Shown here one piece after another: positions 3,933 to 57,547 of a stretch of 64,000 nt of DNA (position 1 is the stretch's first letter; each line of letters starts with the position of its first letter). A model generated the notes under the pieces. It saw only the letters and a list, made by a program, of their open reading frames with translations. It was not told the DNA's origin and made no database searches. The stretch comes from Octopus bimaculoides (taxonomy: Eukaryota), in the NCBI RefSeq assembly GCF_001194135.2, contig NC_068981.1, forward strand, positions 119,880,663-119,944,662. Reading direction: 5' to 3'. Both the position numbers and the translations under genes were made by a program.

Positions 3933-4334
3933 GTTTGTTGCCAACTTAATGTGGCAGTCACAGGAAAGGACAGAATGCTACTGCTATTTAGCCCCAGGAA
4001 ACATCGCCTCTAGTTGGCTGTGACACAAGCGTTCTGTGTCCTTTCTAATTTTGTAGATCAATGAATTTATTTCATTTGAAATTCTGTTTTCAAAGGCAAA
4101 TAAGCACCGACAGTTAGCAAGCCAAGCTACTCCAGACTGATGAAGAGCAATGGCTCTGAAACTAGTCTCTAGATGCTGACTTTGCTGCGTGGAGGTGCTT
4201 ATCTCCCCTGTTTGAAAATTTAAGGACACAGAACGCTTGTGTCACATAACCAACTGGAGACAGTGTTTCCTGGGGCTAAATAGCAGTAGCATTCTTCCCT
4301 TTCCTGGAACCGCCACATTAAGTTGGCAACAAAC
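3933..4334 (+). mobile_element. Inverted-repeat element enclosing a hammerhead ribozyme (probably a Penelope pLTR or retrozyme derivative)
   Basis: Arms 3933-4042 and 4223-4334 are near reverse complements, with the hammerhead motif between them. Confidence 0.7.
4131..4173 (+). ncRNA. Minimal type I hammerhead ribozyme, near intact
   Basis: TCCAGA-CTGATGA-AGAGC(AATG)GCTCT-GAAA-CTAG-TC^TCTAGA: full core, 5-bp helix II, palindromic ACTAGT helix III, GUC triplet, helix I 5 of 6 paired. Confidence 0.85.
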
Positions 4335-6720: not shown

Positions 6721-6759
<39 letters not shown>

Positions 6760-6762
<3 letters not shown>

Positions 6763-8755
6763 ATAAATAAAATAAGTTGAATAGGATCAACCCTACCAAA
6801 GTTGATAGCAATAGTAATAAAAATAACAATAGAAAGAAGAAGAATTATAACTATAACTTTACGATCTACAATAATACTGAGGGCAGTTTTTACACCAAAA
6901 ACAAAAATATTAAAAATAATAAGCGGAATAAAGATAACATCTGGTTAATAATCCCCTTCGCGATGCAACTAAAAACCAGCATAGTTAAATCTATAATGAA
7001 ACTTATGAATAAGCACTTCAATATGAATACGAAATACTCAGAAATCTTTAGCAATAAAATTGGAGTAGGCTATAGCCTAACTAGCAGCCTAGCTACTATT
7101 ATAGCCTCTATCAACAATAAAAAGTTAGACGCCTTCTATGAAACTAGGAAGAATAACAATAAAAAGCGCAACAACCAATCGATTGATATAAGTGATCCCC
7201 CAAATAACTCGCCCTCTAAAAATTCGGACAACCACCTTATAAATGATAGTCTCCTCCCCACCCATATCATAGGCACAGATAATCTTACTAATCTATGTGG
7301 CTGCAGAGATGAAAATACTTGTGAATTCTTGAATAAATGTAAAACTAAAAATGTAATCTACCAATGTGATGGATTCTCCAATAAATACAAGTAAATTTAT
7401 ATAGGAGCAACTAAAAATGAAATGAAACTTAGATATAATTCCCATCGCTCAAGTTTCAGAAATAGAAGTAAGGATAACTCTACTGGATTAAGTAGGTACA
7501 TCTGGGAACTGAAAGACAATAACATTATAGATTAGAATGGCGTATCCTAGCAAAACATCTTCATATGACCTTAACAATAATTGTTGTAATTTATGCATAA
7601 ATGAGAAATTCTTCATTTTAATGGCCAAATCAGAATTACTTAATAAACGAGGCGAGAAAAATACAAGTTTTCATAAAGATAAATTCTTTTTCTCTAAATA
7701 CCGCTAATACTTACATTACAGGTTATTAGCTGACCTGTCTAACATCTGATTACCTCCTCTAACCCTCCTCCTTACCAAAGAAAATAATTTAACATCACAT
7801 CACAATGAAATTAAATTACCCCGATTAACTGAATTATCGATCTTAAATCTACGATATACACTCGGACATATAATTCTCTATAATATATTCACTTTAAAGG
7901 TAGATCGCTGACTAACATACCAATTGCTAGGACGGCCACTAACATAAACATGATTAAACGAGCGACTTAGCTTATCCTAGCCGATTGTATTGGTTTTTAA
8001 TTATATTAACGAGAACATAGCCCGCACCGCACATAACAACATGTTATTTTTTATTTATATATTTATTATTATACCTTTTACGTAACCCAAATTTATACAT
8101 TATATCGCACTAACTTTTTAAAAGCATCCTTAGTTTTTAACAAGAGCATTCTTTGTTATCATATGGACTTATCTAGCGGTCCGAAACAGCGTTATATATT
8201 ACAATTAACAACACCGGATATTATTACCGGGTATAACTCTTTCGACTAACACTGCCGATCAACTAGTCCTTTTACCCACTTATTGCTCCATTCATCTAAT
8301 TGAAGAAACGTACACACACGTGGAGCCAAAAAAGGGCACAAAAATGTAAGCCTAAAGACTTAACGAACTTTTCCTTTTTTCCTTTTTCTTTTCATTTCCC
8401 TTTTTCTCCTATCTATATTCCTCCGATAAACTCTAAATCATTCTGACGATGTTTGTTAAATAGAACGAGATAAATGCAAATTTACTTCGAAATGACAAAC
8501 TGAAACAGCTGTGAATATTCTTGAACTACAATTAAACTATGACCTTTTAATACTAATGATCAACTTCTAATTGTTAATTGTTGCTTCATTTCTTTTATCT
8601 GAATATATTAAACCACGATTTTACCATTTAAATTACCAACTACTGTTAACCTTATAGCAAGGCCTAAACATAGTGAGGTAATACACCAGTAGTGCCTACG
8701 GATACATTTATCCCTTAGACGGTTGCATAACCTCTAACTCATAATTTTTCTATAG
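6760..8755 (+). mobile_element. 5'-truncated Penelope-like retroelement (GIY-YIG endonuclease and 3' pLTR region)
   Basis: Linker NIWLIIPF...KHF...IFS...YSL, then CGCRDENTC...NVIYQC...*IYIGATKNEMKLRYNSHRSSF...LSRYIWELK...CNLCINEK. Degenerate hammerhead in the tail. Confidence 0.9.
8438..8518 (+). ncRNA. Degenerate hammerhead ribozyme in the Penelope tail
   Basis: CTGACGA (8443-8449), GTTTGT/ACAAAC helix II, then GAAA-CAGCTG-T-G. The triplet is GUG, a non-cleaving type. Confidence 0.55.
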
Positions 8756-8758
8756 CAG

Positions 8759-8792
<34 letters not shown>

Positions 8793-8987: not shown

Positions 8988-9038
<51 letters not shown>

Positions 9039-10332
9039 TTCTCTCTTTCTCTCTTACTCTCTCTCTCCCTCCCTCTCTCTTTCACTCTGCTGCTCTCCCT
9101 CTCTTTCCCTTCCCTTCTATCTGCTACCCACACGTGACCCGTGACTGATTTTCTATTTCCTCTGCCTTTTCGACGCCGGACGCCCAGCGTACTGGACAAC
9201 CTTTTCTCCTTTCTTACTAATTCTGTTCTTTATATCCATTTGAGGATTTCTTCCTAGCGTTAATCCATTATACTCGTGTTTGGCCGAAAGGCGCTATTTA
9301 TTGTCTTCGTCTATGGTTTTAAATTACATTTGTTTACTTTCGTACGTCCACCCTGTATTGTTTTGTTCGTTCGAGCCCTAATTCTACGCAAATCTTGCAG
9401 GTTCCGCCGATATACGAAGTTCCCAGTTTTATCGTTAAAGGCACGAAATTGAGTATTAGTATTTTCGATCGATAACTGATGAAGATTTGGGGTCCTTCTG
9501 TATCTGTCCTACATGTGCGTTTGTGTGTGTATACGTATGAGCGTTTGTATGTGTATGTATATGTTTGTGTATGTATGTGTGTATATATGTGAGTGGGTGT
9601 GATATATATGCACATATATATGTGTATGCATGAGTGTATGTATGGGTTTTTGCATGTGTATATACGTTTGGGTGTGTGTGCGTACGTGCGTGTGTGTGTG
9701 TGCATGCGTGCACGCGCGCGTGCAAATCTATCGTCGAAAGCAGATGTAGGAACGAAATACCAATAGAGCAGGTTAGTACCTGCTTTCTCCTGAAGTTTCT
9801 GTTAGGATAACTGGCTCCAACAAGTGATAGGTAAAATAGTAATGAGATAGTAGCACCTATCATTCAAAGCTATTAGAAGTGGCAATTGTGGAAGAGAATG
9901 AGTTCCTCGTTAGTTTGTAGTGATTAGTTCCGGTCATACCTTCATGGAAAACAGATATTAATCGGTGTTCTATTAGGGCTAGGATCAATATCTTTCTCTT
10001 TTCGATCTATCACACTTGAGTTGGGGTGCTTACTGTGGAGAGGTAACTGAAAACCCCGAAACTCTTGGGAACGATGCTCCAAGACGCTGCTGCCGGAATG
10101 CAACATTGAAAGCATATTTCATTTTCGCTTTCACTGTGCCGTTGGAGTAACTTATCTCTTATTTGATTAAGATTAATACCCGGGAAATTAAACAGAAAAG
10201 AAATATGTCAAATAGTTTTTAATTATATTTTCAACCAACAAATAAATCATGAGACACACACAACCTAAATGAATAAAACTAATGAAAGTTAAATGATTTG
10301 TCCATGAACAAAGACCATGTTCATCAACTGAA

Positions 10333-35060: not shown

Positions 35061-35205
35061 TTATCCATCTTTTTGACAATACAATTCTTTTAATGCCTTC
35101 AATTCCTCTATTAATGTTTTGTTTTGATTTTCCAGAACAGATACTCGATTTTCCAGGCATTTCACATATTCTTTCTTCTTCCGTCGACATTCTGAAGCTG
35201 CCTCT
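35061..35205 (-). CDS. CREB1: CREB1/CREM-family bZIP factor, last coding exon (basic region C-half and leucine zipper)
   Basis: Acceptor ttttcag|A, phase 2. Reads (R)EAASECRRKKKEYVKCLENRVSVLENQNKTLIEELKALKELYCQKDG* with TAA at 35063-35061. Nearly identical to the CREB1 C-terminus as I recall it. Confidence 0.97.
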
Positions 35206-36730
35206 CTGAAAAACAGAAACAATTTTTAATACTTCAACAATCTAGTTTATTACATTGTTTTTAGACTAATGTTCTCCTAACAAGAAAGCAGAGAAAAAAC
35301 TGGATTATGAACTTGTAATCCAATATCTTATCCACCTGGCTTCTCCAAAATATGTAGCTAAGGTGCAAGTATGGCTGTTTGGGTACAGAGCTTGCATTGT
35401 AATCACATAGTTTCAAGTTATATCTCACTACGTGACTTCATGAACAGACATCTTCTTCTATAGTCTCAAGTTGATAAATGCCTTGTGTGTGTGTGGTGTG
35501 TGTGTGTTCATATTTGAGGCTAGGAGTCTGTGTGCCACTGCATGTATGTCTGTGCAAGTGCATACAAATGTTGAACTCCCTATCTTCACTTATTACCACC
35601 TGAGTGAAACTGTGGAGTAATGTTTACATTCTCTGTTGAAATTATGACTGGTCACTCTGCAATTTCATAGATAACAAAGTAAAAAAAAAAAAACCCTATC
35701 TTGGAAATAAGGATTGGCAACAGGGAGGGCATATGACCACGAAATGCTGCCTCAAAATAAGTCACCAGCAAAAATAGGTGTAAAACGATAAAAGGAATTA
35801 TACTGAACTAGGATGTTTTATAAGACTTTCTAATGTAACTTAATGCAACAGAATAAAGCATTTTAAGTATGTGAAGAGAAAAGGGTGTGAGTTATAAGCC
35901 ATTCAAATGTCCTGAGAAATAAGCATATTCAAATACTTTCTTTTCAGAAAAGTAAATAGCACTGAATCTAAGATACTTTGGATTAATATGTCCAAGACAG
36001 AAATCCTGTCCTTCTTCATATTTTGCACCATCCTCACTTAATTTCTATTTTTCAAGGGTTCTACATTTTTGTTTCAAAAATAACCATTTGATTCTAGAGA
36101 TAATGAGTCAGAAACAAATATAACAAAACTTTGATTGCTCATTCACAAACATCATGTCTTTGGTTCTTTTCCCATTTTGTTTATTCTTTTACTTGTTTCA
36201 GTCATTTGACTGTGGCCATGCTGGAGCACTGCCTTAAAAGTTTTTTAGTTGAAGAAATCACCCCCCCCCCCACGAACATATTCTTTGTAAGCCTAGTACT
36301 TATTCTAACAGTCTCTTTTGCTGAACTGCTAAATTATGGGCACGTAAACACACCAACATCAGTTGTCAAGTGATGGTGGCAGACAAACATAAAGACATAA
36401 ACACACACACACATATATATACATACACAATGAGCTTCTTTCAGTTTCCATCTACCAAATCCACTCACAAGGTTTTGGTTGGCCCAAGGCTATAGTAGAA
36501 GACACTTGCCCAAGGTGTCACACAGTGGGACTGAACCTGAAACCATGTGGCTGGGTAGCAAGCTTCTTACTGCACAGCCACTATGTTTAACATTTTATTT
36601 TATTTTTAAATGTAATTTCTGTTTTATTCACTAAATAACAGGCTAATAAAATTACAAATAGATTAAATTTTATTTCAAAACACCTTCAGCTATAACCAAT
36701 TTTGAAATAAACTTTATTTACAACTCTCAC

Positions 36731-36884
36731 CTGTTTTTTAATAGACGAAGTTCTCGCTTCCGAGCTGCTTCTTCTGATAATTGTTGAGGACTGGTAATTG
36801 GACTTCCAGTGGTTGCCATAACAACACCTTGAGGCAAAGATGTCGCAATCTGGTAAGCCTGCACATTTGTGCCACCAACTGTAA
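36731..36884 (-). CDS. CREB1: CREB1 penultimate coding exon (end of Q2 and start of basic region)
   Basis: ttttttag|TT...AACAG|gtgaga, 154 nt, phase 1 to 2. Reads (V)TVGGTNVQAYQIATSLPQGVVMATTGSPITSPQQLSEEAARKRELRLLKN(R) and joins the last exon in frame. Confidence 0.96.
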
Positions 36885-37222
36885 CTAAAAAAGCAAAACG
36901 AATGTTCAAAGAGGAAAAAACCAAAACCCAATTAACTTCCATATCTTTTATCTTTTACTTGTTTCAGTCATAAGACTGCGGCCATGCTGGGACACCACCT
37001 TGAAGAAGCCATGTGGTTGCCAAGCAAGTTCTTACCACACAACCATGCCTATTTGCATTTTTCTTAAAATGGTAATGAAAATAATTAAGTCCATGATGGG
37101 GTTCCTAAATTTTGTCATACTAAGTCTGTGATCTAGTTCTGTTAAATAAATGACCTAATTAGTACTGGGATTAAAATTCTTGACAGCATAATGGTTGAGG
37201 TTAAAGAGGAGTAGACGTTTAA

Positions 37223-42540: not shown

Positions 42541-43313
42541 CCATGGGCACAATATTTCATTTGATAAATGTTAACTTATTTACATGTCTATATATTTACT
42601 AAAATTGCAAAAAATACAAAAATGAGGCAAATGAAATCCTAAAATTGATATTTCTCAGCATCAACTTTTAATCTTTGACATTGTGGACGCTCCTGTCGTA
42701 GATGACAGATGAAGGTTCTGTTGGACAACCTGCTCAGATGATTTGTTCACAGTGATTAAATGTTTGTGCTGCACGTTAGTTCACTCTCACCATCAATTTG
42801 ACATTTCCTGTACAGGTGCAATATATATATATACACACAAAACTCATAAATTTTCAAATAAAATATACTGCAATGTGTTTGGCATGTAAAAAGTTATTGG
42901 ATAAGTAGGATGTATGGGAAGTAATTGCATGCCTTACAACTACATTTGCTTTCCTTATTGGAAAACTAGAAATAGAATTCCTAAGAAATTCATTCTGGAC
43001 TTAATAATAGAGAACTACTACTATTATACTGTGGGAAAATGAATTAAGTTAATGTTTGTGACAAAGCCCCAACATTTAGAACTACATTATTCTATGTGTA
43101 AGCAATGGCTAAAAGAAAGAGTTGAACGAGGTAATGGCTCACTTTACATCAAAGTAAGTAAAAAGATCAACGAGAGATCAACATCCCTTAGAAATGTTTG
43201 CTTTCCTTATTGTACAAATAGAAACAGAAGTCCTAAGAAATTCATTCTGGACTTAATAATAGAGAACAGCTACTATTATATTGTGGGGAAATGGATTCAG
43301 TTAATTTACTTAC

Positions 43314-43493
43314 CAGGAATTAAAAATTGTCCATCAGGACCTTGGGCATACTGTACAATAGTGGCAGTACCAGATGTTGTACCAGCACCAGATGATGGAT
43401 TTGCATTGGTCATTGTTAATGTTTGAAGACCTTGACCAGCCACTGTTCCTTCTGGATGTGTAGTTATTTGGATGGCACCAGATGGGACTAATG
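43314..43493 (-). CDS. CREB1: CREB1 Q2 glutamine-rich activation-domain exon
   Basis: attttag|CA...CCTG|gtaagt, 180 nt, phase 1-1. Reads LVPSGAIQITTHPEGTVAGQGLQTLTMTNANPSSGAGTTSGTATIVQYAQGPDGQFLIP; the GAIQ, QGLQTLTMTN and QYAQ..DGQ motifs match CREB1. Confidence 0.95.
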
Positions 43494-45619
43494 CTAAAAT
43501 AAAATGGAAAAAGGAAACAAAAATGTAATATTATACTGCCATAGCAGAAGTAAATATATATTTTTAGAAGCATTGAAATGTGAGTTCAGTTTATAGCAAA
43601 ATGAAATAGACATAAAATAGTAAAAACAGTTAAACTTGAATGTGTGAAATTAAGCATAACAATTTTGGAAAAATAGTGTGTATATGTGTGTTATAGAAAG
43701 AGAATGATCTCACTTTCAAATTATAAAGAGAGAAACACTATGAACATTTCAATAAGGGAGAACTAAATATTCTTCCAAATTCATAACATAAGAGAAATAA
43801 AAAGAAGCAAACAATCTCTGCAAATCAAAATCTCCATACAAAAGAAGTTGTTTGCAAAACAAAGAATAAAACTCTAAAAAGACATTGTGTGTGTGTGTTT
43901 AAAAAACATACAGTAACACATCTTCCAGGAGACAATGTCAAAGAGTAATCAGAAGACACAAATTCTCAAAGTAACTCTTGGAGGTAAATTCATTAGTCAG
44001 ATCTTAAAAGCTCCTTAATTCATTATGTACTGGTTCAAGAGTGTAGGCAATTGAAATCACTCAGGTTTGGTGATCTCATTCATCTACTAACTAAAAATGG
44101 CTAATTGAAACTACCAAAAGTATCAGTGTGATAGTGGTACTTCCAAGATTATAACAATAAACTAATTAAGTCTTTGACATACTAAAAGCAACTTATTAAA
44201 AAATTACAATTTGAACAATCTATGCTAAAATGTTGCCATATATAAGGTTTTGTTGCTTCAAGAAGAAAAACTGAAAACACAAGAACTATGATGACCAAAT
44301 GAAGGCACTTCAATATTCACCAGCTAGAAATGGCAGCCAAATCTACCTTCAATTAAATGCACTTAAAAAAGAAGCGTACTATCTTGAATAACATGATGCT
44401 TTAAAATACATTAAACCTGAGGGAAAAAAGACAGGATGACTTTGGTTCACCATAGGTCTTCTCAATCAAATTGGGACTAAACTACAACATTTACTCCCAC
44501 AACTGGATAATTAAAATGATGAATGAAATCTAGCAACAAAAAGAAAAGAGCCACAACAGTTCATATAAGTATAAGAATTTATAGCAATATCAAATCCATA
44601 AGAAATAAAACAAATCTCAAGAAAAAAAGGATGATAATCAGATACATTAATAAAATTGAAATCTTGATGCAAACATACTTAATTATTTCCAAGCAGCTTA
44701 AATAGAAAAACTGAGGATTAAACAGATAATTACTAATAATGAACTTCTTGATAAAGACATTCGAGCGAGATCGTTGCCAGTGCCACTGGACTGGCTCCTG
44801 TGCAGGTGGCATGTAAAATACACCATTTTGAGCATGGCCGTTGCCAGTACCGCCTGACTGGCCTTCGTGCCGGTGGCACATAAAAGCACCCACTACACTC
44901 TCAGAGTAGTTGGCGTTAAGAAGGGCATCCAGCTGTAGAAACTCTGCCAAATCAGATTGGAGCTTGGTGTAGCCATCTGGTTCACCAGTCCTCAGTCAAA
45001 TCGTCCAACCCATGCTAGCATGGAAAGTGGACGTTAAACGATGATGATGATGATGATATGTGAGAATACAATTTAGGATTACATTTTTTTGTAGATTGTC
45101 TGTAATAACAAAACTTCCAAAGCATCTAAACCAACAGAAAAACTTAAGCCTTGAAGGGATTTTAAGGACTGATACTCATGGTATAAAGTAAAAGAGAGAC
45201 TGTTCTTTCCCCAGACTGAATACTAGTCTACCACAGGTGAAAATTGTCACATGATCTAGTATCAATTTTCAATAATCAAGTAAAACGAAATTAATTTTTT
45301 GTTGGGCAAGTGTTTGCTACTATAGTCTTAAGTCAACTACTTCCTTGTAAATGAAATTGGTAGATGGAAACTGTGAAAACGTGTGTGTGTGTGTGTTTGC
45401 CTGTATATGCCTTAATGTTTGACATCACTTGAAAGAAACAATGTCTGAGTTTTATCTCCTGAGGTATGAAAACTAGAAATTACTAAAATAAATAAATAAA
45501 TAAATAAAACAACTGGAGTCACATAACTGATTAAAATCTTTCAAGCAGTCGTCCAGCATGGCCACAGTCTAGTGATTGAAACAAGTAAAAAGTAATAAAG
45601 AATAGAACAAACTTCAGTA

Positions 45620-51008: not shown

Positions 51009-51032
51009 GCAAACCTTCCATCTGGCTGTATA
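51009..51032 (-). CDS. CREB1: Candidate 24-nt in-frame CREB1 microexon
   Basis: Long polypyrimidine tract then tag|TATACAGCCAGATGGAAGGTTTGC|gtaagt. Length is a multiple of 3 and it is open in phase 1 (x-YSQMEGL-P), matching the downstream exon. No homology support. Confidence 0.6.
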
Positions 51033-52366
51033 CTAAAATTTAAGAAGAGAAGAAAAAAAAGAAAAACAAAATAAACATTCATAAATTTTAAACTGCTTTT
51101 TTTTTTTTTTAGGTAAGTTAGTTTTAAAAAGATGTCAATAAAATCTATTTTGAATTAGTTTTGTATGTTAATCAACAATAGCAACAAAAAAAATTATCTA
51201 GGAGATTTTATTATCAAGTCTTCCTTGTGAATCAGTAATAGTTATTCAACATAAAGACAAAATAAAACAACTAGAATCATTTTTTTTCCCTCGGACATTA
51301 GTGACAAAATCTCTAATAATCACTGATGGTTTCTTGCTCAGATTTCAAGCAATATAGTAGTTGCTGCAAATTGTCACTGAAGAATTAGAATTTGATCTCT
51401 CAGGAATATATCAAAGCTCTAATTATCCTCTCTGACTGGAGAAACAGAGAGAGAAAAAAGCAAGATATGGAAACAGAAGACATGTTGACCCACTGAACAG
51501 AAAATCATTACAATACACCAATCAGAAGAATTTCTAACCAAGTAATTGATAAAATAAAATTAACAAAATAAAATGAATTAAATAAAATTTCTAGACAAGT
51601 GCATGGAACCTAAATATACCCTCAGAAAACTAATCATTAGAAACCTTTAATTGCAATTTATAAAGCAGACACAGAATTAGCAAACTAATTATGGAACATA
51701 TAAGATATACAGAGAAACTAAGAATACCTGAAAAACACTTATTTAAAATGAAATATCCAACATTTTTTTTATAAAAACAAAATATTTGAAGAACAACTTG
51801 TAAAGTAGAACAAAATTATATTATTCCTGTTAACTTAAACATTGTTGAAAACAACAGAAGACCAAGACCAATAAGACTAATTACAACTGAGAAAAAATAA
51901 TGAATACTTCAGTAAATGAACATTATGACAGAATCACAATATCTAATAAAAACAAAACCTGAAGTGAGAAAACAGGTTCAAAACTGACAATATGGTTTCG
52001 TAGAAGTGAAAAAGTATTCCAAAGAAATAATATTGATTTATTGAATGCGTTCATAAAATGTAACAAGTGACCAGTAAAACAACTTTAACAGAATGGATAT
52101 TATATATATATATACATATATGATACAAAACAGGTATGTATGTTAGCGTGAAAAACATGAAATATTTTGAGCCACAGACAAATAAAGCAACAAGGAACTA
52201 TATCACACATGCAGACAGCATTAATATTTTACTAGAAGCAAAACATCAACAATGTCAGAATTAAAATGAAGATAATTTCCAATAGTACCCCACTTACAAG
52301 CAAAGATATAGAAGCAACACACACACACACACACACTCACATCTCTCTCTCTCTCTCTCTCTTTAT

Positions 52367-52420
<54 letters not shown>

Positions 52421-53242
52421 TATATATAAATATTTAAATAAACTGATAACAAAAGCAAATGACATTATTTTGAAAGAAGAAACTGGTTTCCATGGAAATT
52501 GTTAGATAATTCTCATAACAAGCAATGATTTCATCTAAACTAATTTTTATCAAAGTAAACCAGCCATTAAGTTCTTGGTCTCTTATAAAAGTTTACAACA
52601 CGCAAACACTTATATACATACACAGAGAGAAAACAAAAGTGGAATGATTAAGATCTTATATCAACCATGCAACCTACTCAAGTCACACATAAATTGTAAA
52701 TTTCATTTTGAGAACATTATTAAATAAAACTCCTGTCTGTTGTGTCACTAAGTTTTTACTGAGAACATATTTTTCGAGGTTAGATGATTTGGCATCTATT
52801 TCTAGCATATAGGAGTCCACTTTTGCTGGTCATTCCTCTTATTTTTGTATGTAATATAATTTTAATCTTCGGAGTTTTTTAATATGCTAGACCACTGGTT
52901 TTAATTGATTAATATCAATTTCTACCCTTAATAATAAATAATAAATTTTAAATAATGATGTTCTCAAACCGGTAAATTAGCTGCAAAAATTTATTAACTG
53001 CAGAGTTATTTCCGGACTTAGCACGCCAGATTGAAGACATTTGAAAAGATACACTCAATGTAATTTGTAGAACTTTACACGTGCTCCCTTTTGGGTGGAC
53101 GTCTTGTGTCTAGTTCTGGAAATTGTATTTTATAAATCGACANNNNNNNNNNNNNNNNNNNNNNNNNNNNNNNNNNNNNNNNNNNNNNNNNNNNNNNNNN
53201 NNNNNNNNNNNNNNNNNNNNNNNNNNNNNNNNNNNNNNNNNN

Positions 53243-54165
53243 AGTGGTGCTTTTTCCTGGAACGAACCCAAACTGTATCTCATCTAAACTGACTCTCTCC
53301 CTAATGTGTTGGGCTATGACCCTCTCTGTGACCTTCATTACCTGGTCCAACAACTTGATACCTCTATAATTATTCGTATCTAATGTATCACCTTTACCTT
53401 TGTCGCAGTTGACTATGGTGCTGCTACACCAGTCATTGGGTATGACTCCTTCGTGTATCCCCTGATTAACTATACGGGTCATTAGGCTATAGCTGACACT
53501 GCCAGATATTTTGAGCATCTCTGCAGTGATTCCTGATGGGCTGGGGGCTTTCCTTGTCTTCATACTCTTGATCGCTTTATCTACTAAGGTACTGTCAATT
53601 AGGATAGCTGGTCCCTCTGTTGGGTCGACATATGGCAGGCTCTCTTTCTCCCATTCATTCTCTTTATTAAGCAGTCTTTCATAGTGGCGTCTCCAGACCT
53701 CTCTCTTTGCAGCCTCGTTTAGCGCGAGTGAGCCATCATCCAAGCGGACACATTTCTCACCTACATCACGATTCTTTCTCAAACACTGTCTTGCAACACG
53801 AAATACTTCAAGTCTTTGGTCCTCACGGCACAGAACATTGGCAAGTTTTTTCTTATCTGCTTCCCCTCTGGCTAAGTAAACCTGTCTCCTAGCTTCCCTT
53901 CTGGCAGTCTGATACAATTCCATGCTACCTCTGTTCTTCCCGTCCTTCCAAGCCTGTTTCTTTTGTCTAATAGCCCTGTCAATCACATTGTTCCACCACC
54001 ACATGACTTTGGGTCGAGAGGGGACTTTACACCAGCCACAGATCTGGTCGGTGGCTCTCAGCAGGTTGTCCCGTAGAAACCTCCAGCTGTCTTCCACGTT
54101 GTGTGATGCTATATCCCCTTCTACTTCGTCAAATGCTTCGAGTAATATGTCTCTAAATCTGAGAT
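53243..54165 (-). mobile_element. RTE LINE fragment (EN-RT linker and RT N-terminus), cut by an N-gap
   Basis: WWWNNVID...KAPSPSGITAEMLK...NYRGIKLLDQVMKVTER...QFGFVPGKSTT. Confidence 0.93.
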
Positions 54166-54449
54166 GGGAGTAATATGAAAAGGCTGAAAGTTGAAAAATC
54201 TTAGCTGTACATATCCTGGAATTCATATTCTGTCAGCAGAAGAGATTCGAAGTCGATTTGGAAAAAGTGGGATATTGAACTGGTGTATATAGAGTTAGGG
54301 TTAGGTAGTAATCGAAGAGAGAGAGAGGGGGAGAGAGAGAGAGAGTGAGACAGAGAGAGGGACAGGCAGTAAGTACATCACACGGGAATAATTCTTTGGG
54401 TTTTCGGTAACATAATTGAATGAGACAGCAAATGCTTAAATCATATATG

Positions 54450-54487
<38 letters not shown>

Positions 54488-54499
54488 TGTATTTATATA

Positions 54500-56790
54500 T
54501 CTATATTAAAATACAACAAACGAAAGACAGAAGATGGAATATAAGACAATTTATTATTAATCACAACAATTGTTTCGATACATCTAGTATCGACTCCTCT
54601 TGTGGGATACTTAACCACTGGTTGAGGAGTAACTGGTGATGCAGACGCATCTCGTCAGGTAATAAATAAATAAAAACAACTCGTTAAAATGACTGTTTCA
54701 CAATGTAAGTTTCTGTTTTGTAGAGAGAAAATCAGCCTGACGGAGGAAAAATCTTCATATGTATAGAAGATCAAAAATAAAATTGCAGAAGACAAAAAGA
54801 GAAATGAACACGTAATCCAGTGAGAAAAGTATTGAAAATAACCGTTAACAGACTTGGATGTATAAACACCTTTGGACAAGCTGCATGGCACGAGTACACG
54901 TGCTTATACAAGCATCAGCAAAAATGTGAGCATATGCACACACAAGGTTTGGTGCATTAATGATTACAAAGTGATTTAGTTATTTATTAGGTGTTTAGAA
55001 GAACGAGGAGGTTAAAAGAAAACGTAAGTCATCCATACCTCTAAGTGAATTAAATTACATTAAGTTAATGGTTACTCAAAATTCATTCTCACCGCATTGA
55101 GCGAAAGTACATTTATATGTGTGTAGGTATCTCAAGAGTCGTTCAGAAATTCTATTAAGTATCTCCTCGTTAGTCCACAGAATAGACAGGGATTCCTCAG
55201 AGACAGCATCTCCTGGAAATTACACAGTATGGTTTTGCATGTCTAACTATGGACCAATTAATGGTGTATTTCATTTTACCCTCCTTCAGTCGCCATATAA
55301 AATCTACCGAAGATGTCGAATGTCTCTTATTGATTGACTTAAAGCTGGCAACATGGTTATGACATCGATTCTTAAATGAATCAGCCGTTTGCCCAATGTA
55401 AATACAGGGCCCTCCCCTTGTGTGCACAGTACATTTATATACAAGATTTGTACTCATACAGAGATTCATCAAAGGACATTTTGATCTATCTCTGCATGAG
55501 CATTTATCATATTTATTTATATATAAGGCACTCCCGACTTCATTTACTGGCGTTATCATGCTAGCTGTACCATGAGTATTTCTACTACTACAAATTGGTC
55601 GAAGTTGATGATTGGTTGGTATTTAGATGCAAATGTTTGCTAGATCCAGTAGGTGGGTTATTGATCTTTTGCCACATTTTGCTATTGTTTATGCAATGCA
55701 TAAGCTGCTCTAAATTAGAGTTAGCGTAGGATAAATTCATGGTGTGTTGATTAAAAATAGCATAATACCAATTAGATTTAGGAAAACATTTGTCCAAAGC
55801 AGCAAAAAATTTACCAGCAATCCTGGTTGAAACATGCAAACCGAAAATTGGGTTGAACCAGAGGACATCCTGATTCCTATATCTGTTGTTAGGTTTATTT
55901 GATTGAGTGTGTTGTACAGGATTGGAACAAGCAGTTGAATTACTATGTTGCATGTGTCTATGAGTTTTCTTTGGTAGTTCATTGACATGACCAATTCTTT
56001 CTGGCTTGTATTCTTTATCGGACTGATTTCTCAAATGGTAACGTTGTGTTGCTTATGCCAGCATCTTGTTTATAATGAATTTTACCAAGGTAACCAGCCT
56101 TAGCTGGAGCATCATTATAATAAGATGCATGAGATCCAAAACTTTTACTGTTAGCAGATGATCTAGAGATTCTGGTAGAAATACTCTTAACTAGTCCTGT
56201 ATAATCGAGGGTGGACGGTTGGATGCTACATTAATGTACTTAATATGATCATTCAGCTTATGAAATGGTTCAAATAATCCAGTATCAAAACAGAAGGTAG
56301 CATCAAGAAAATTCACTCTACGATAATCTTTACCTATAGTAATGCTTAGTACTAAATTTTTGAAAGGTCTAAAGAAATTTTTCCTACGCCTTTCTAACTG
56401 TACTTTACTACTTCTGGCTAGAAAAAATAAAGCATCATCCTTATATAGACCCTGTTACTTCCGGAAAGAAAGACTGGATTAATGAAAGGATATATATTCC
56501 AACTAGGTCACAGGACTGAGCAGAATTGTGTGAGCCCATTGCTATATCAAATACATTTTCCCTATCTAATCTACTCCATAAATATAACATCAAAATCTAC
56601 TGGAGTGGCTCGCACAGCAAGAATAATATCTATTTCGCATCGGGACAAATCAGAATTTTTCATGCTAAAAATCAGGGCTTGATTGAGAATGATCGGGTTG
56701 ATAGTAGCATAGTAGCTCTCTATATCAAGTTACAAGAATTTACTAGTCTTACTAATTTCTAGAAGCTTGAACTATCCAACCACCTCTTGG
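54500..56790 (-). mobile_element. Penelope-like retroelement (RT, GIY-YIG and pLTR), decayed
   Basis: GLYKDDAL RT core near 56440, WFNP linker (ORF 55588-56034), GIY-YIG region LVYKC...YIGQTADSFKNRCHNH (ORF 55197-55559), hammerhead in the 3' region. Confidence 0.93.
54551..54669 (-). ncRNA. Type I hammerhead ribozyme with intact core and enlarged helix II
   Basis: TTATTTATTAC-CTGACGA-GATGC...GTATC-GAAA-CAATTG-TT^GTGATTAATAA. GUU triplet, helix I 10 of 11 paired. Confidence 0.8.
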
Positions 56791-56985
56791 GCATCAGACC
56801 AGAGGGCTAATCTAATTTCAGACTTACGGATGGGTATTACCCTGTCGTATGTATTTATGTATACATATATATATATATATATACATACACACACACACAC
56901 ACATCTATATATTTATGTATCTATATTAAAATATTAGGAAAATATGAGATTTATAAGCCCTAAAATTAACTTCATAATTGCCCAT

Positions 56986-57319: not shown

Positions 57320-57547
57320 TATTAAAATTTCTGGCCTGTACTCTTTATCTGAGTGATTTCTCAAATGGTAACGTTGTGGTGATATACAATGTGCATCACA
57401 GTTGTACGAATTACTAGTGTTGCATATGCCAGCATCTTGTTTATAAGGAATTTTATCAAGGTACCCAGCCTTAGCTAGAGCATCATTATAATAAGATGCA
57501 TAAAATTCGAAAATTTTACTGTTAGCAGAAAATCTAGAGATTCTGGT
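57320..57547 (-). mobile_element. Short paralogous Penelope fragment
   Basis: Matches 56003-56180 apart from an extra segment of about 45 bp. Confidence 0.75.

What the first reader, a model, noticed from the sequence alone, without database searches (positions are those of the whole stretch)
54551..54669. Intact-core hammerhead ribozyme on the sense strand of a CREB1 intron
Seen: full catalytic core (CUGACGA...GAAA), GUU triplet with predicted cleavage between 54565 and 54564, a 10/11-bp helix I and a palindromic CAAUUG helix-III loop, on the same strand as the CREB exons. Established: Penelope-like elements carry minimal type I hammerheads that cleave best as dimers, and mammalian CPEB3, a memory gene, has an intronic self-cleaving (HDV-like) ribozyme. 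Inference: because the KID exons are not in this window, the motif is transcribed in CREB pre-mRNA about 3.5 kb upstream of the candidate microexon and could cut it co-transcriptionally, affecting output or isoform choice.
Basis: partly seen in the sequence, partly recalled or inferred. Interest (0 to 1): 0.85.

Follow-up and report, generated by a model that had tools for sequence, protein, structure and literature searches.

The report
Retrotransposon hammerhead ribozyme in octopus CREB intron
The hammerhead ribozyme motif is real, but it is the standard 3'-end ribozyme of a dead Penelope-like retrotransposon that landed in an intron of the octopus CREB-family gene; nothing indicates that it regulates that gene.

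Summary
On the minus strand, 54669-54551 carries a complete type I hammerhead: CUGACGA, G10.1-C11.1, GAAA, A15.1-U16.1 and GUU, with the cut between 54565 and 54564. Helix I is 10/11 bp, helix II is 10 bp with a 55-nt insert, and helix III lies in the 8-nt palindrome ACAAUUGU. No motif of this quality arose in 400-500 shuffles.

It is not a free-standing host element. It sits about 430 nt downstream, on the same strand, of a frameshifted, 5'-truncated RT plus GIY-YIG ORF (56846-55100). That ORF is bracketed by (TA)n and belongs to the Hydra clade of Penelope-like elements. Relatives from bryozoan and marine-metagenome contigs carry a type I hammerhead in the same place, some with equally long helix II inserts. 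A second decayed copy in the window (6939-7704, +) has its own hammerhead relic at 8443-8513.

The host gene matches Octopus bimaculoides CREB/CREM. The KID exons lie outside the window, so the motif is intronic and in sense orientation.

Regulation of CREB is unsupported. There is no partner copy for dimerisation. The hammerhead fold is 8.3 kcal/mol above the predicted optimum. The triplet is GUU where all nine relatives have GUA. The element's protein is dead. This is an ordinary new copy of a known kind.

The parts
54551..54669 (-). Type I hammerhead ribozyme motif as a whole (helix I 5' strand through helix I 3' strand)
   Evidence: the only full descriptor match in the window; 0/400 and 0/500 shuffles.
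54659..54669 (-). Helix I, 5' strand (positions 2.11-2.1), AU-rich
   Evidence: pairs 10/11 with 54564-54554.
54652..54658 (-). Catalytic core box 1, C3-A9 = CUGACGA
54577..54651 (-). Helix II. 10 bp stem (54651-54642 with 54586-54577, three G.U pairs, G10.1-C11.1 at the base) enclosing a 55-nt insert (54641-54587). The insert has an internal ACUCCUC/GAGGAGU hairpin and two competing local hairpins.
   Evidence: Relatives L005/L006 and L009 also have long helix II inserts.
54573..54576 (-). Catalytic core box 2, G12 A13 A14 A15.1 = GAAA
54565..54573 (-). Helix III and cleavage triplet: A15.1-U16.1, C15.2-G16.2, loop AAUU. ACAAUUGU (54573-54566) is a perfect palindrome. GUU with U17 at 54565; predicted cut 54565|54564.
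   Evidence: self-duplex dG -6.4 kcal/mol.
54554..54564 (-). Helix I, 3' strand (positions 1.1-1.11)
55100..56846 (-). Decayed, 5'-truncated ORF of a Hydra-clade Penelope-like element. It aligns to about aa 230-700 of ~705-aa relatives and has at least 4 frameshifts plus in-frame stops. It includes RT motifs (FDIAMGS, YKDD), the HTH/linker region, the CxCX5C linker (KCSCRDRSKC) and the GIY-YIG remnant (ORF 55559-55197).
   Evidence: family fold matches TERT; clade features from PMC8557442.
54670..55099 (-). 3' untranslated region of the element, between the ORF remnant and the hammerhead (~430 nt; 60-190 nt in relatives)
54443..54506 (.). (AT)n microsatellite at the 3' boundary of the element
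   Evidence: Hydra-clade PLEs insert into (TA)n (PMC8557442).
56848..56887 (.). (TA)n microsatellite at the 5' boundary of the truncated element
57328..57547 (-). Extra ~220-bp fragment of the same element family (about 91% identical to 55998-56176)
6939..7704 (+). Second, unrelated-at-DNA-level Hydra-clade PLE remnant (aa ~485-703), bracketed by (AT)n at 6724-6759 and 8764-8792
8431..8520 (+). Hammerhead relic of the second PLE copy: CUGACGA 8443-8449; U.U at 10.1/11.1 plus 8 bp of helix II; GAAAC 8502-8506; palindrome ACAGCUGU 8505-8512. Position 17 is G (8513), which is incompatible with cleavage, and helix I is only 3 bp.
51010..51033 (-). Host gene microexon (VYSQMEGL), the next exon downstream of the hammerhead in the transcript
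   Evidence: 100% match to aa 130-137 of O. bimaculoides isoform X3 (P0136).
43312..43497 (-). Host gene Q2-region exon
36730..36891 (-). Host gene exon encoding the start of the basic region
35070..35207 (-). Host gene bZIP exon

Best explanation
The motif is the hammerhead ribozyme that Hydra-clade Penelope-like retrotransposons (PLEs) carry just downstream of their single RT-GIY-YIG ORF.

A 5'-truncated copy of such an element inserted into a (TA)n tract inside the KID-to-microexon intron of the octopus CREB/CREM gene, in the sense orientation. It has since decayed: frameshifts and stops in the ORF, G.U pairs in helix II, and GUU instead of the family's GUA.

In an active element the ribozyme sits in the repeat shared by tandem copies. 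It is thought to process multimeric element transcripts, acting as a dimer through its palindromic helix III and possibly helped by the element's protein (inferred from PMC4209133 and PMC11167929).

In this solitary dead copy it is passively transcribed as part of the intron. It probably cleaves very slowly or not at all, and is a neutral relic rather than a CREB regulator.

Shown: the motif, its PLE context, the family-wide association, and its intronic sense position. Inferred: low activity and lack of host function.
For: - Motif and chance level.
- Same-strand RT + GIY-YIG remnant directly upstream.
- The family is a telomerase-like RT. AF2 model pLDDT 83.7; top Foldseek hit is TERT 3du5, E 3.5e-9, followed by other RTs.
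- Hydra-clade diagnostics from PMC8557442 are met. RWK and DKT are invariant in the family alignment. CxCX5C is present in the family and in the window ORF. Units are under 3 kb. Both window copies have (TA)n on both flanks.
- Hammerheads on the same strand 60-190 nt after the stop codon were seen in 8 of the 10 related loci fetched: L001, L002 (Watersipora), L003, L004, L005/L006, L010, L011. L009 has its core box about 85 nt after the stop but its cut site about 320 nt away, because of its long helix II insert. L011 has one on both sides of the ORF.
- L005/L006 (70 nt between the core boxes) and L009 (~220 nt) show the same long helix II architecture, and palindromes ACAAUAUUGU / ACAGCGCUGU comparable to ACAAUUGU here.
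- The second PLE remnant in the window has its own hammerhead relic.
- Signs of decay or low activity: dead ORF; ddG 8.3 versus 0.4-2.9 kcal/mol; no partner copy; GUU versus GUA in all relatives.
Against: - Rfam gives no hammerhead hit, even at E<=10.
- A covariance model I built from seven short-helix-II relatives scores the site at only 9.5 bits (E 8.6). The same model also nearly misses the bona fide long-insert relatives (18.7 bits; L009 missed), so this says little.
- The ORF-to-hammerhead distance (430 nt) is longer than in relatives.
- The conserved TTGAGCACTCT motif of relatives is absent.
- No copy of the same octopus subfamily was available, so the ancestral sequence of this hammerhead, and hence which bases are decay, is unknown.
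- The core is fully intact despite a badly decayed ORF. This could reflect chance (only ~15 constrained bases) or retention.
- Nearest-neighbour energies ignore hammerhead tertiary contacts.
Confidence: 0.85

Rival explanations
1. Exapted host ribozyme. The PLE-derived hammerhead is retained by selection and cleaves CREB pre-mRNA co-transcriptionally, tuning mRNA output or inclusion of the downstream microexon.
For: The core is intact, the orientation is sense and the position is intronic, 3.5 kb upstream of an annotated microexon. The core survives in an element whose ORF is thoroughly broken. Retrozymes are under-represented in Xenopus introns, which suggests hammerhead-bearing inserts in genes are not always neutral (bioRxiv 10.64898/2026.07.22.740005).
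Against: - The motif's presence is fully explained by the transposon.
- There is no cis partner for dimerisation. Monomer helix III is only 2 bp, and the palindrome duplex is the weakest of the perfect palindromes in the family (-6.4 kcal/mol).
- The hammerhead fold is strongly disfavoured against competing hairpins.
- The triplet is GUU rather than the family's GUA.
- Metazoan PLE mini-hammerheads cleave poorly in vitro (PMC4209133), and one needed the element's protein (PMC11167929), which is dead here.
- From my own knowledge (not checked here): slow intronic ribozyme cleavage is tolerated by splicing through exon tethering (Dye, Gromak and Proudfoot 2006).
- No conservation data.
Confidence: 0.05
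2. Chance match: an AT-rich low-complexity region happens to contain the two core boxes and pairable flanks.
For: Helix I is low-complexity AU. Relaxed descriptor hits arise in 7.5% of shuffled windows, which implies thousands per gigabase genome. Rfam and my CM give no significant score.
Against: No shuffle reached comparable quality (0/400; 0/500 with the palindrome descriptor). The only two descriptor hits in 128 kb of searched strand both lie downstream of PLE ORF remnants, on the ORF's strand. The architecture matches relatives in other phyla.
Confidence: 0.03
3. The hammerhead belongs to a separate non-autonomous element (a non-LTR retrozyme or SINE-like PLE derivative) that inserted next to the PLE remnant, rather than to the PLE copy itself.
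For: The 430-nt gap between ORF end and hammerhead is longer than in relatives. Retrozymes derive from PLE terminal repeats (bioRxiv 10.64898/2026.07.22.740005). (TA)n tracts are hot spots where several elements could pile up.
Against: It is a single monomer, not a tandem array. Strand and order are as in intact relatives. No internal (TA)n or other boundary lies between ORF and hammerhead. The region has no other copy in the window. Copy B shows the same layout, with an even longer spacer.
Confidence: 0.07

Closest known systems
Hammerheads of Hydra-clade Penelope-like elements (Craig et al. 2021, PMC8557442)
   Same: A short single-ORF element with a telomerase-like RT, CxCX5C linker and C-terminal GIY-YIG without CCHH. 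It inserts into (TA)n and carries a type I hammerhead in the repeat that follows the ORF. The clade is reported from Mollusca among other aquatic invertebrates.
   Different: This copy is 5'-truncated and dead. Its hammerhead has a 55-nt insert in helix II, GUU instead of GUA, and a longer ORF-to-ribozyme spacer. The standard models I could run (Rfam; my own CM from short-helix-II relatives) miss it.
Minimal PLE hammerheads (Cervera and de la Pena 2014, PMC4209133)
   Same: Type I topology, location in PLE terminal repeats, longer-than-usual helix II, G10.1-C11.1, palindromic 15.2-16.2 plus loop 3 implying action as a dimer. They are mostly found as single widespread motifs from truncated PLEs.
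   Different: No unpaired nucleotide between A9 and 10.1. Helix I is long (10/11 bp) rather than 4-5 bp. Helix II is far longer.
Amphibian/axolotl satellite and retrozyme hammerheads (PMC7229834)
   Same: Helix III of 1-2 bp capped by a palindromic tetraloop; weak as monomer and efficient as dimer. A U.U at the base of helix II, as in relatives L004/L005 and window copy B.
   Different: Those sit in 330-350 bp tandem arrays that provide the dimer partner and have loop 1-loop 2 tertiary contacts. Here there is a single copy, with no recognisable loop-loop contacts.
Conserved host intronic ribozymes (mammalian CPEB3 HDV-like ribozyme; amniote intronic hammerheads HH9/HH10)
   Same: A self-cleaving-ribozyme motif on the sense strand of an intron of a neuronal regulatory gene.
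   Different: Those are defined by deep conservation in orthologous introns and by demonstrated cleavage as monomers. Neither is shown here, and this motif is visibly part of a transposon. CPEB3 is also a different ribozyme class.

Membership tests
Hammerhead ribozyme, type I | Conserved core C3 U4 G5 A6 N7 G8 A9 ... G12 A13 A14 | tested here: met
   CUGACGA 54658-54652; GAA 54576-54574.
Hammerhead ribozyme, type I | A15.1-U16.1 pair and cleavage-site nucleotide H17 (not G) | tested here: met
   A 54573 pairs with U 54566; U17 at 54565. All nine relatives have A17, so U17 may be a derived, slower variant.
Hammerhead ribozyme, type I | Three helices flush with the core, helix I open (type I), R10.1-Y11.1 pair | tested here: met
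   Helix I 10/11 bp, helix II 10 bp starting with G-C, helix III 2 bp plus tetraloop.
Hammerhead ribozyme, type I | Score at or above gathering threshold with an Rfam hammerhead covariance model | tested here: not met
   No hammerhead family reported at gathering or at E<=10 on 54300-54900. The 55-nt helix II insert is the probable cause.
Hammerhead ribozyme, type I | Significant score with a covariance model built from related PLE hammerheads (window excluded) | tested here: inconclusive
   R1 gives 9.5 bits, E 8.6. The positive controls with long helix II also fail or nearly fail (L005/L006 18.7 bits; L009 missed).
Hammerhead ribozyme, type I | The hammerhead-compatible fold is thermodynamically accessible | tested here: not met
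   The constrained hammerhead fold is 8.3 kcal/mol above the MFE. Relatives are at 0.4-2.9, with one at 7.2. The energy model ignores tertiary contacts.
Hammerhead ribozyme, type I | Site-specific Mg2+-dependent self-cleavage | not testable with these tools
   Needs in vitro transcription or RNA end mapping.
PLE-associated hammerhead (Cervera and de la Pena 2014) | Lies in the terminal repeat / 3' region of a Penelope-like element, on the element's strand | tested here: met
   About 430 nt downstream of the RT-GIY-YIG remnant 56846-55100 on the minus strand. The same layout is seen in 8 of 10 related loci and in window copy B.
PLE-associated hammerhead (Cervera and de la Pena 2014) | Palindromic 15.2-16.2 and loop 3 (dimer-forming helix III) | tested here: met
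   ACAAUUGU is a perfect palindrome; self-duplex -6.4 kcal/mol.
PLE-associated hammerhead (Cervera and de la Pena 2014) | Unpaired nucleotide between A9 and 10.1 | tested here: not met
   G10.1 follows A9 directly and pairs with C11.1. Relatives L004, L005 and copy B instead have U.U at that position.
PLE-associated hammerhead (Cervera and de la Pena 2014) | A second copy nearby (tandem repeat) to form the active dimer | tested here: not met
   No second compatible hammerhead in the 64-kb window. The only other one (8443, + strand) is on the opposite strand, has a different palindrome and has G17.
Hydra clade of Penelope-like elements (Craig et al. 2021) | Telomerase-like reverse transcriptase | tested here: met
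   RT motifs A/B/C in the family alignment and in the window remnant. AF2 model of relative P0002 hits TERT first, then other RTs. Sequence-only searches (Pfam RVT_1, PDB hmmsearch) found nothing.
Hydra clade of Penelope-like elements (Craig et al. 2021) | C-terminal GIY-YIG endonuclease without CCHH, preceded by a CxCX5C linker | tested here: met
   The window ORF 55559-55197 has KCSCRDRSKC followed by VYKC...CIYIGQT...R..H. Pfam GIY-YIG is only weak (E 0.028; 4/30 relatives, best E 8e-4). The family has invariant C564/C566/C572. Absence of CCHH was not examined residue by residue.
Hydra clade of Penelope-like elements (Craig et al. 2021) | N-terminal RWK motif, and DKG changed to DKT | tested here: inconclusive
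   Both are invariant in the relatives (R37 W38; D115 K116 T117). The window copy lacks its first ~230 codons, so the motifs cannot be checked in it.
Hydra clade of Penelope-like elements (Craig et al. 2021) | Short element (<3 kb) inserted into (TA)n | tested here: met
   Relatives have units of 2.3-3.0 kb, three of them on contigs whose ends overlap or repeat. Window copies A and B are each bracketed by (AT)n.
Conserved host intronic ribozyme (CPEB3-like / HH9-HH10-like) | Conservation of the ribozyme in orthologous introns of related species | not tested
   No cephalopod genome was reachable. Exact-protein look-ups failed, and the metagenome pattern scan gave only chance hits.
Conserved host intronic ribozyme (CPEB3-like / HH9-HH10-like) | Efficient cleavage as a single (monomeric) motif | not testable with these tools
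   Only indirect indications, all unfavourable.

The most novel reading that the evidence does not exclude
A hammerhead inherited from a dead Hydra-clade PLE keeps residual self-cleavage inside CREB/CREM pre-mRNA. Cleavage would occur either as an intermolecular dimer or by pairing in trans with transcripts of live family members. This would measurably lower full-length transcript yield or shift inclusion of the microexon 3.5 kb downstream, giving an invertebrate parallel to the CPEB3 intronic ribozyme in a memory gene.
Probability: 0.04. Interest if true: 0.7.

Novelty: new member of a known kind. Interest (0 to 1): 0.2.

Why it matters
As it stands this is an annotation result. It correctly labels a ribozyme motif in a neuronal transcription-factor intron as transposon cargo, and it warns against reading function into the thousands of PLE hammerheads scattered through invertebrate genomes.

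Two points have modest specialist value:
- Hydra-clade PLE hammerheads can carry 50-220-nt inserts in helix II. These make them invisible to Rfam and to my covariance model from short-helix-II relatives, so their numbers are probably under-counted.
- The octopus genome holds decayed Hydra-clade copies with the (TA)n target preference described for the clade.

If this copy did cleave CREB pre-mRNA, it would be a tractable example of a transposon ribozyme acting on a host gene.

Tried and rejected
- Rfam at gathering score and at E<=10 found no hammerhead.
- The covariance model R1, built from seven relatives, is not informative for long-insert variants.
- The first homology search, with the stitched decayed ORF, returned one protein. 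Searching again with that protein opened up the family.
- Sequence-only classification of the family failed: Pfam found no RVT_1, and PDB hmmsearch found nothing. Structure prediction plus Foldseek was needed.
- DNA comparison of the two PLE copies in the window found only shared microsatellites.
- A search for the relatives' conserved TTGAGCACTCT motif near the window copies found none.
- Exact-protein look-ups meant to reach the source assembly or the O. bimaculoides locus found nothing on record.
- The metagenome pattern scan for close hammerhead relatives gave three hits without helices, judged to be chance.
- The Stylophora locus L007 and the short contig L008 gave no hammerhead. L007 is a fused or intron-containing gene model, and L008 ends 29 nt after the stop codon.
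- I considered and rejected reading the CUGACGA...GAAA hit at 8443-8492 as the hammerhead of copy B. The true second box is the GAAAC at 8502.
Full report
**The motif.** On the minus strand, 54669-54551 reads as follows:
- Helix I 5' strand: UUAUUUAUUAC.
- Core: CUGACGA (C3 = 54658 to A9 = 54652).
- Helix II 5' strand: GAUGCGUCUG, starting at G10.1 = 54651.
- A 55-nt insert.
- Helix II 3' strand: UAGAUGUAUC, ending at C11.1 = 54577.
- GAAA (54576-54573), then C-AAUU-G, U16.1 and U17 (54565).
- Helix I 3' strand: GUGAUUAAUAA (54564-54554).

All invariant hammerhead positions are present. Helix I pairs 10/11, and helix II is 10 bp with three G.U pairs. Helix III is A-U plus C-G closing AAUU, and ACAAUUGU is a perfect palindrome.

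**Chance.** A type I descriptor run over both strands finds only this site.
- In 400 dinucleotide-preserving shuffles, a relaxed match occurred in 7.5% of windows, and one of comparable quality in none.
- A second descriptor tolerates a 10.1/11.1 mismatch and any base at 17, but demands at least 6 bp of helix II and a perfect palindrome starting at A15.1. It finds two sites in the window and none in 500 shuffles.
- Rfam 15 reports no hammerhead at gathering score or at E<=10 locally.
- A covariance model built from seven related hammerheads gives the site only 9.5 bits. The same model gives 18.7 bits to the bona fide long-helix-II relatives L005/L006 and misses L009. These negatives therefore reflect the helix II insert, not absence of a hammerhead.

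**Context.** Directly upstream on the same strand, 56846-55100 encodes a frameshifted, stop-ridden reading frame. It contains:
- RT motifs (FDIAMGS; GLYKDD).
- A linker region (FLDATF...SNRPPSI; WFNP...).
- A KCSCRDRSKC (CxCX5C) motif.
- A GIY-YIG remnant (VYKC...CIYIGQT...R..H; Pfam GIY-YIG E 0.028).

A stitched translation found one homologue, and that homologue found 1,729 proteins of about 700 aa. tblastn of 120 of them maps the window copy to about aa 230-700, so it is 5'-truncated. It also reveals a second remnant on the plus strand at 6939-7704.

Sequence-only searches do not classify the family. An AlphaFold2 model of a member (pLDDT 83.7) hits Tribolium TERT first (E 3.5e-9), then other reverse transcriptases.

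The family alignment has an invariant R-W followed by a majority K (RWK), and A-D-K invariant followed by a nearly invariant T (DKT). It also has CxCX5C, CxxC...E and CxH motifs. Units are under 3 kb, and both window copies are bracketed by (AT)n. These are the published diagnostics of the Hydra clade of Penelope-like elements. That clade is reported to carry canonical hammerheads universally and to insert into (TA)n (PMC8557442).

**Relatives carry the same ribozyme in the same place.** Of ten related loci fetched, eight have a type I hammerhead on the ORF strand after the stop codon. In seven it lies 60-190 nt downstream; in L009 the core box is about 85 nt downstream but the cut site about 320 nt, because of its long helix II insert.
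- L001: one decayed copy after the ORF, plus others further downstream.
- L002: the Watersipora subatra chromosome, with a 10-bp AU-rich helix I.
- L003, L004, L005/L006, L009 and L010.
- L011: one on both sides of the ORF.

Three of the ~2.5-kb contigs (L004, L005, L009) have overlapping or repeated ends, as expected for head-to-tail tandems, and L011 holds a partial tandem. All relatives have GUA at the cleavage site and a palindromic or near-palindromic helix III.

L005/L006 have 70 nt between the core boxes, with a perfect 10-bp helix II and ACAAUAUUGU. L009 has about 220 nt. The unusual long helix II of the window motif is therefore a family trait.

The second window copy has its own relic at 8443-8513: CUGACGA, U.U plus 8 bp of helix II, GAAAC and ACAGCUGU. 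However, it has G at position 17 and a degraded helix I.

**Host gene.** Three minus-strand exons match human CREB1. They match Octopus bimaculoides 'cAMP-responsive element modulator isoform X3' at 98-100%. An exact 8-codon microexon lies at 51033-51010. The first 129 residues of that protein, including the KID motif RRPSYRKILNEL, have no counterpart in any frame of the window. The KID exons therefore lie upstream of the window edge, and the hammerhead is inside the KID-to-microexon intron, in sense orientation.

**Likely activity.**
- No compatible second hammerhead exists in the window to supply a dimer partner.
- The palindrome duplex is weak, at -6.4 kcal/mol.
- Two perfect local hairpins (GAUGC/GCAUC and UCGAUAC/GUAUCGA) compete with helix II and sequester G12 and A13. 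This puts the hammerhead-compatible fold 8.3 kcal/mol above the MFE, against 0.4-2.9 for five of six relatives.
- U17 replaces the family's A17.
- Metazoan PLE mini-hammerheads cleave poorly in vitro, even as dimers (PMC4209133).
- The Anolis Poseidon hammerhead cleaved only in the presence of the element's protein, and was dispensable for insertion in vitro (PMC11167929). The protein is dead here.
- Hammerheads with a 2-bp helix III plus tetraloop can show weak monomer activity (22% in 1 h for an axolotl variant; PMC7229834). Residual cleavage therefore cannot be excluded.

**Verdict.** The best explanation is a transposon-borne hammerhead in a dead Hydra-clade PLE copy, not a CREB regulatory device. 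It is a new copy of a known kind. The regulatory reading remains a low-probability possibility that comparative genomics and a simple cleavage assay would settle.

Noticed in passing
window 6939-7704 (+), 8431-8520 (+), flanks 6724-6759 and 8764-8792: A second decayed Hydra-clade PLE remnant, with its own hammerhead relic: CUGACGA, U.U plus 8-bp helix II, palindrome ACAGCUGU, but G17. It is bracketed by (AT)n and shares no DNA similarity with copy A beyond microsatellites.
   Followed up: yes
window 4127-4177 (+), inverted repeats 3933-4043 / 4222-4334: A hammerhead-like core (CUGAUGA-AGAGC-AAUG-GCUCU-GAAAC-UA-GUC) lies in the centre of a ~400-bp unit bounded by 113-bp inverted repeats (89% identical). 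Helix I is poor (3+2 bp). It is the best hit of my CM but not significant (16.3 bits, E 0.15). Core plus a helix II of at least 5 bp arises about 0.18 times per shuffled window. It may be a degenerate mini-hammerhead or chance.
   Followed up: partly
The window is from O. bimaculoides or a very close relative.
   Followed up: partly
window 53075-54226 (-): A 383-aa ORF of a LINE-type reverse transcriptase (…NYRGIKLL…FGFVPGKST…), interrupted by a 100-N assembly gap (53143-53242). It sits just downstream of the PLE and its (TA)n/(CT)n tract, on the same strand as the host gene.
   Followed up: no
window 54316-54361 and 8988-9104: On the element's strand, both PLE copies are followed by (TA)n and then a (CT)n tract, and the two (CT)n tracts are ~90% alike. 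This could be a compound-microsatellite target preference or coincidence in a microsatellite-rich genome.
   Followed up: no
window 57328-57547 (-): A ~220-bp piece of the copy-A PLE (the linker region) is duplicated 1.3 kb upstream at about 91% identity, separated by AT-rich repeats. It is either a local duplication or a fragment of another family member.
   Followed up: partly
L002 3968-3978, 6282-6292; L005 70-80, 180-190; L008 76-86, 135-145; L010 97-107, 167-177, 2535-2545; L011 449-459, 511-521, 2838-2848; also L001, L006, L009: The 11-mer TTGAGCACTCT occurs once or twice between the hammerhead and the start codon in Hydra-clade relatives from different hosts. It is absent near the window copies. 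It may be a promoter/TSS element or a protein-binding site of the element. I did not check whether it is described in the papers read here.
   Followed up: partly
L004, L005, L009 (whole contigs, 2.5-2.6 kb); L011 (3.0 kb, partial tandem): The assembled contigs of three Hydra-clade relatives have overlapping or repeated ends. This implies head-to-tail tandems (or circular templates) with one hammerhead per ~2.4-2.6 kb unit. L011 holds a partial tandem, with a hammerhead on both sides of the ORF.
   Followed up: partly
L005 2404-2495, L006 32-122, L009 2394 to contig end and start: These hammerheads have 70-nt and ~220-nt stretches between the core boxes (long helix II domains). Some also have U.U at 10.1/11.1. 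Standard descriptors and my CM largely miss them, so PLE hammerhead counts in invertebrate genomes may be underestimates.
   Followed up: partly
L001 12907-12964 (-) and 12972-13029 (+): Two identical hammerheads face each other head-to-head within a perfect inverted repeat, downstream of the PLE ORF. This is the inverted 5'-truncated-copy arrangement described for PLEs.
   Followed up: no
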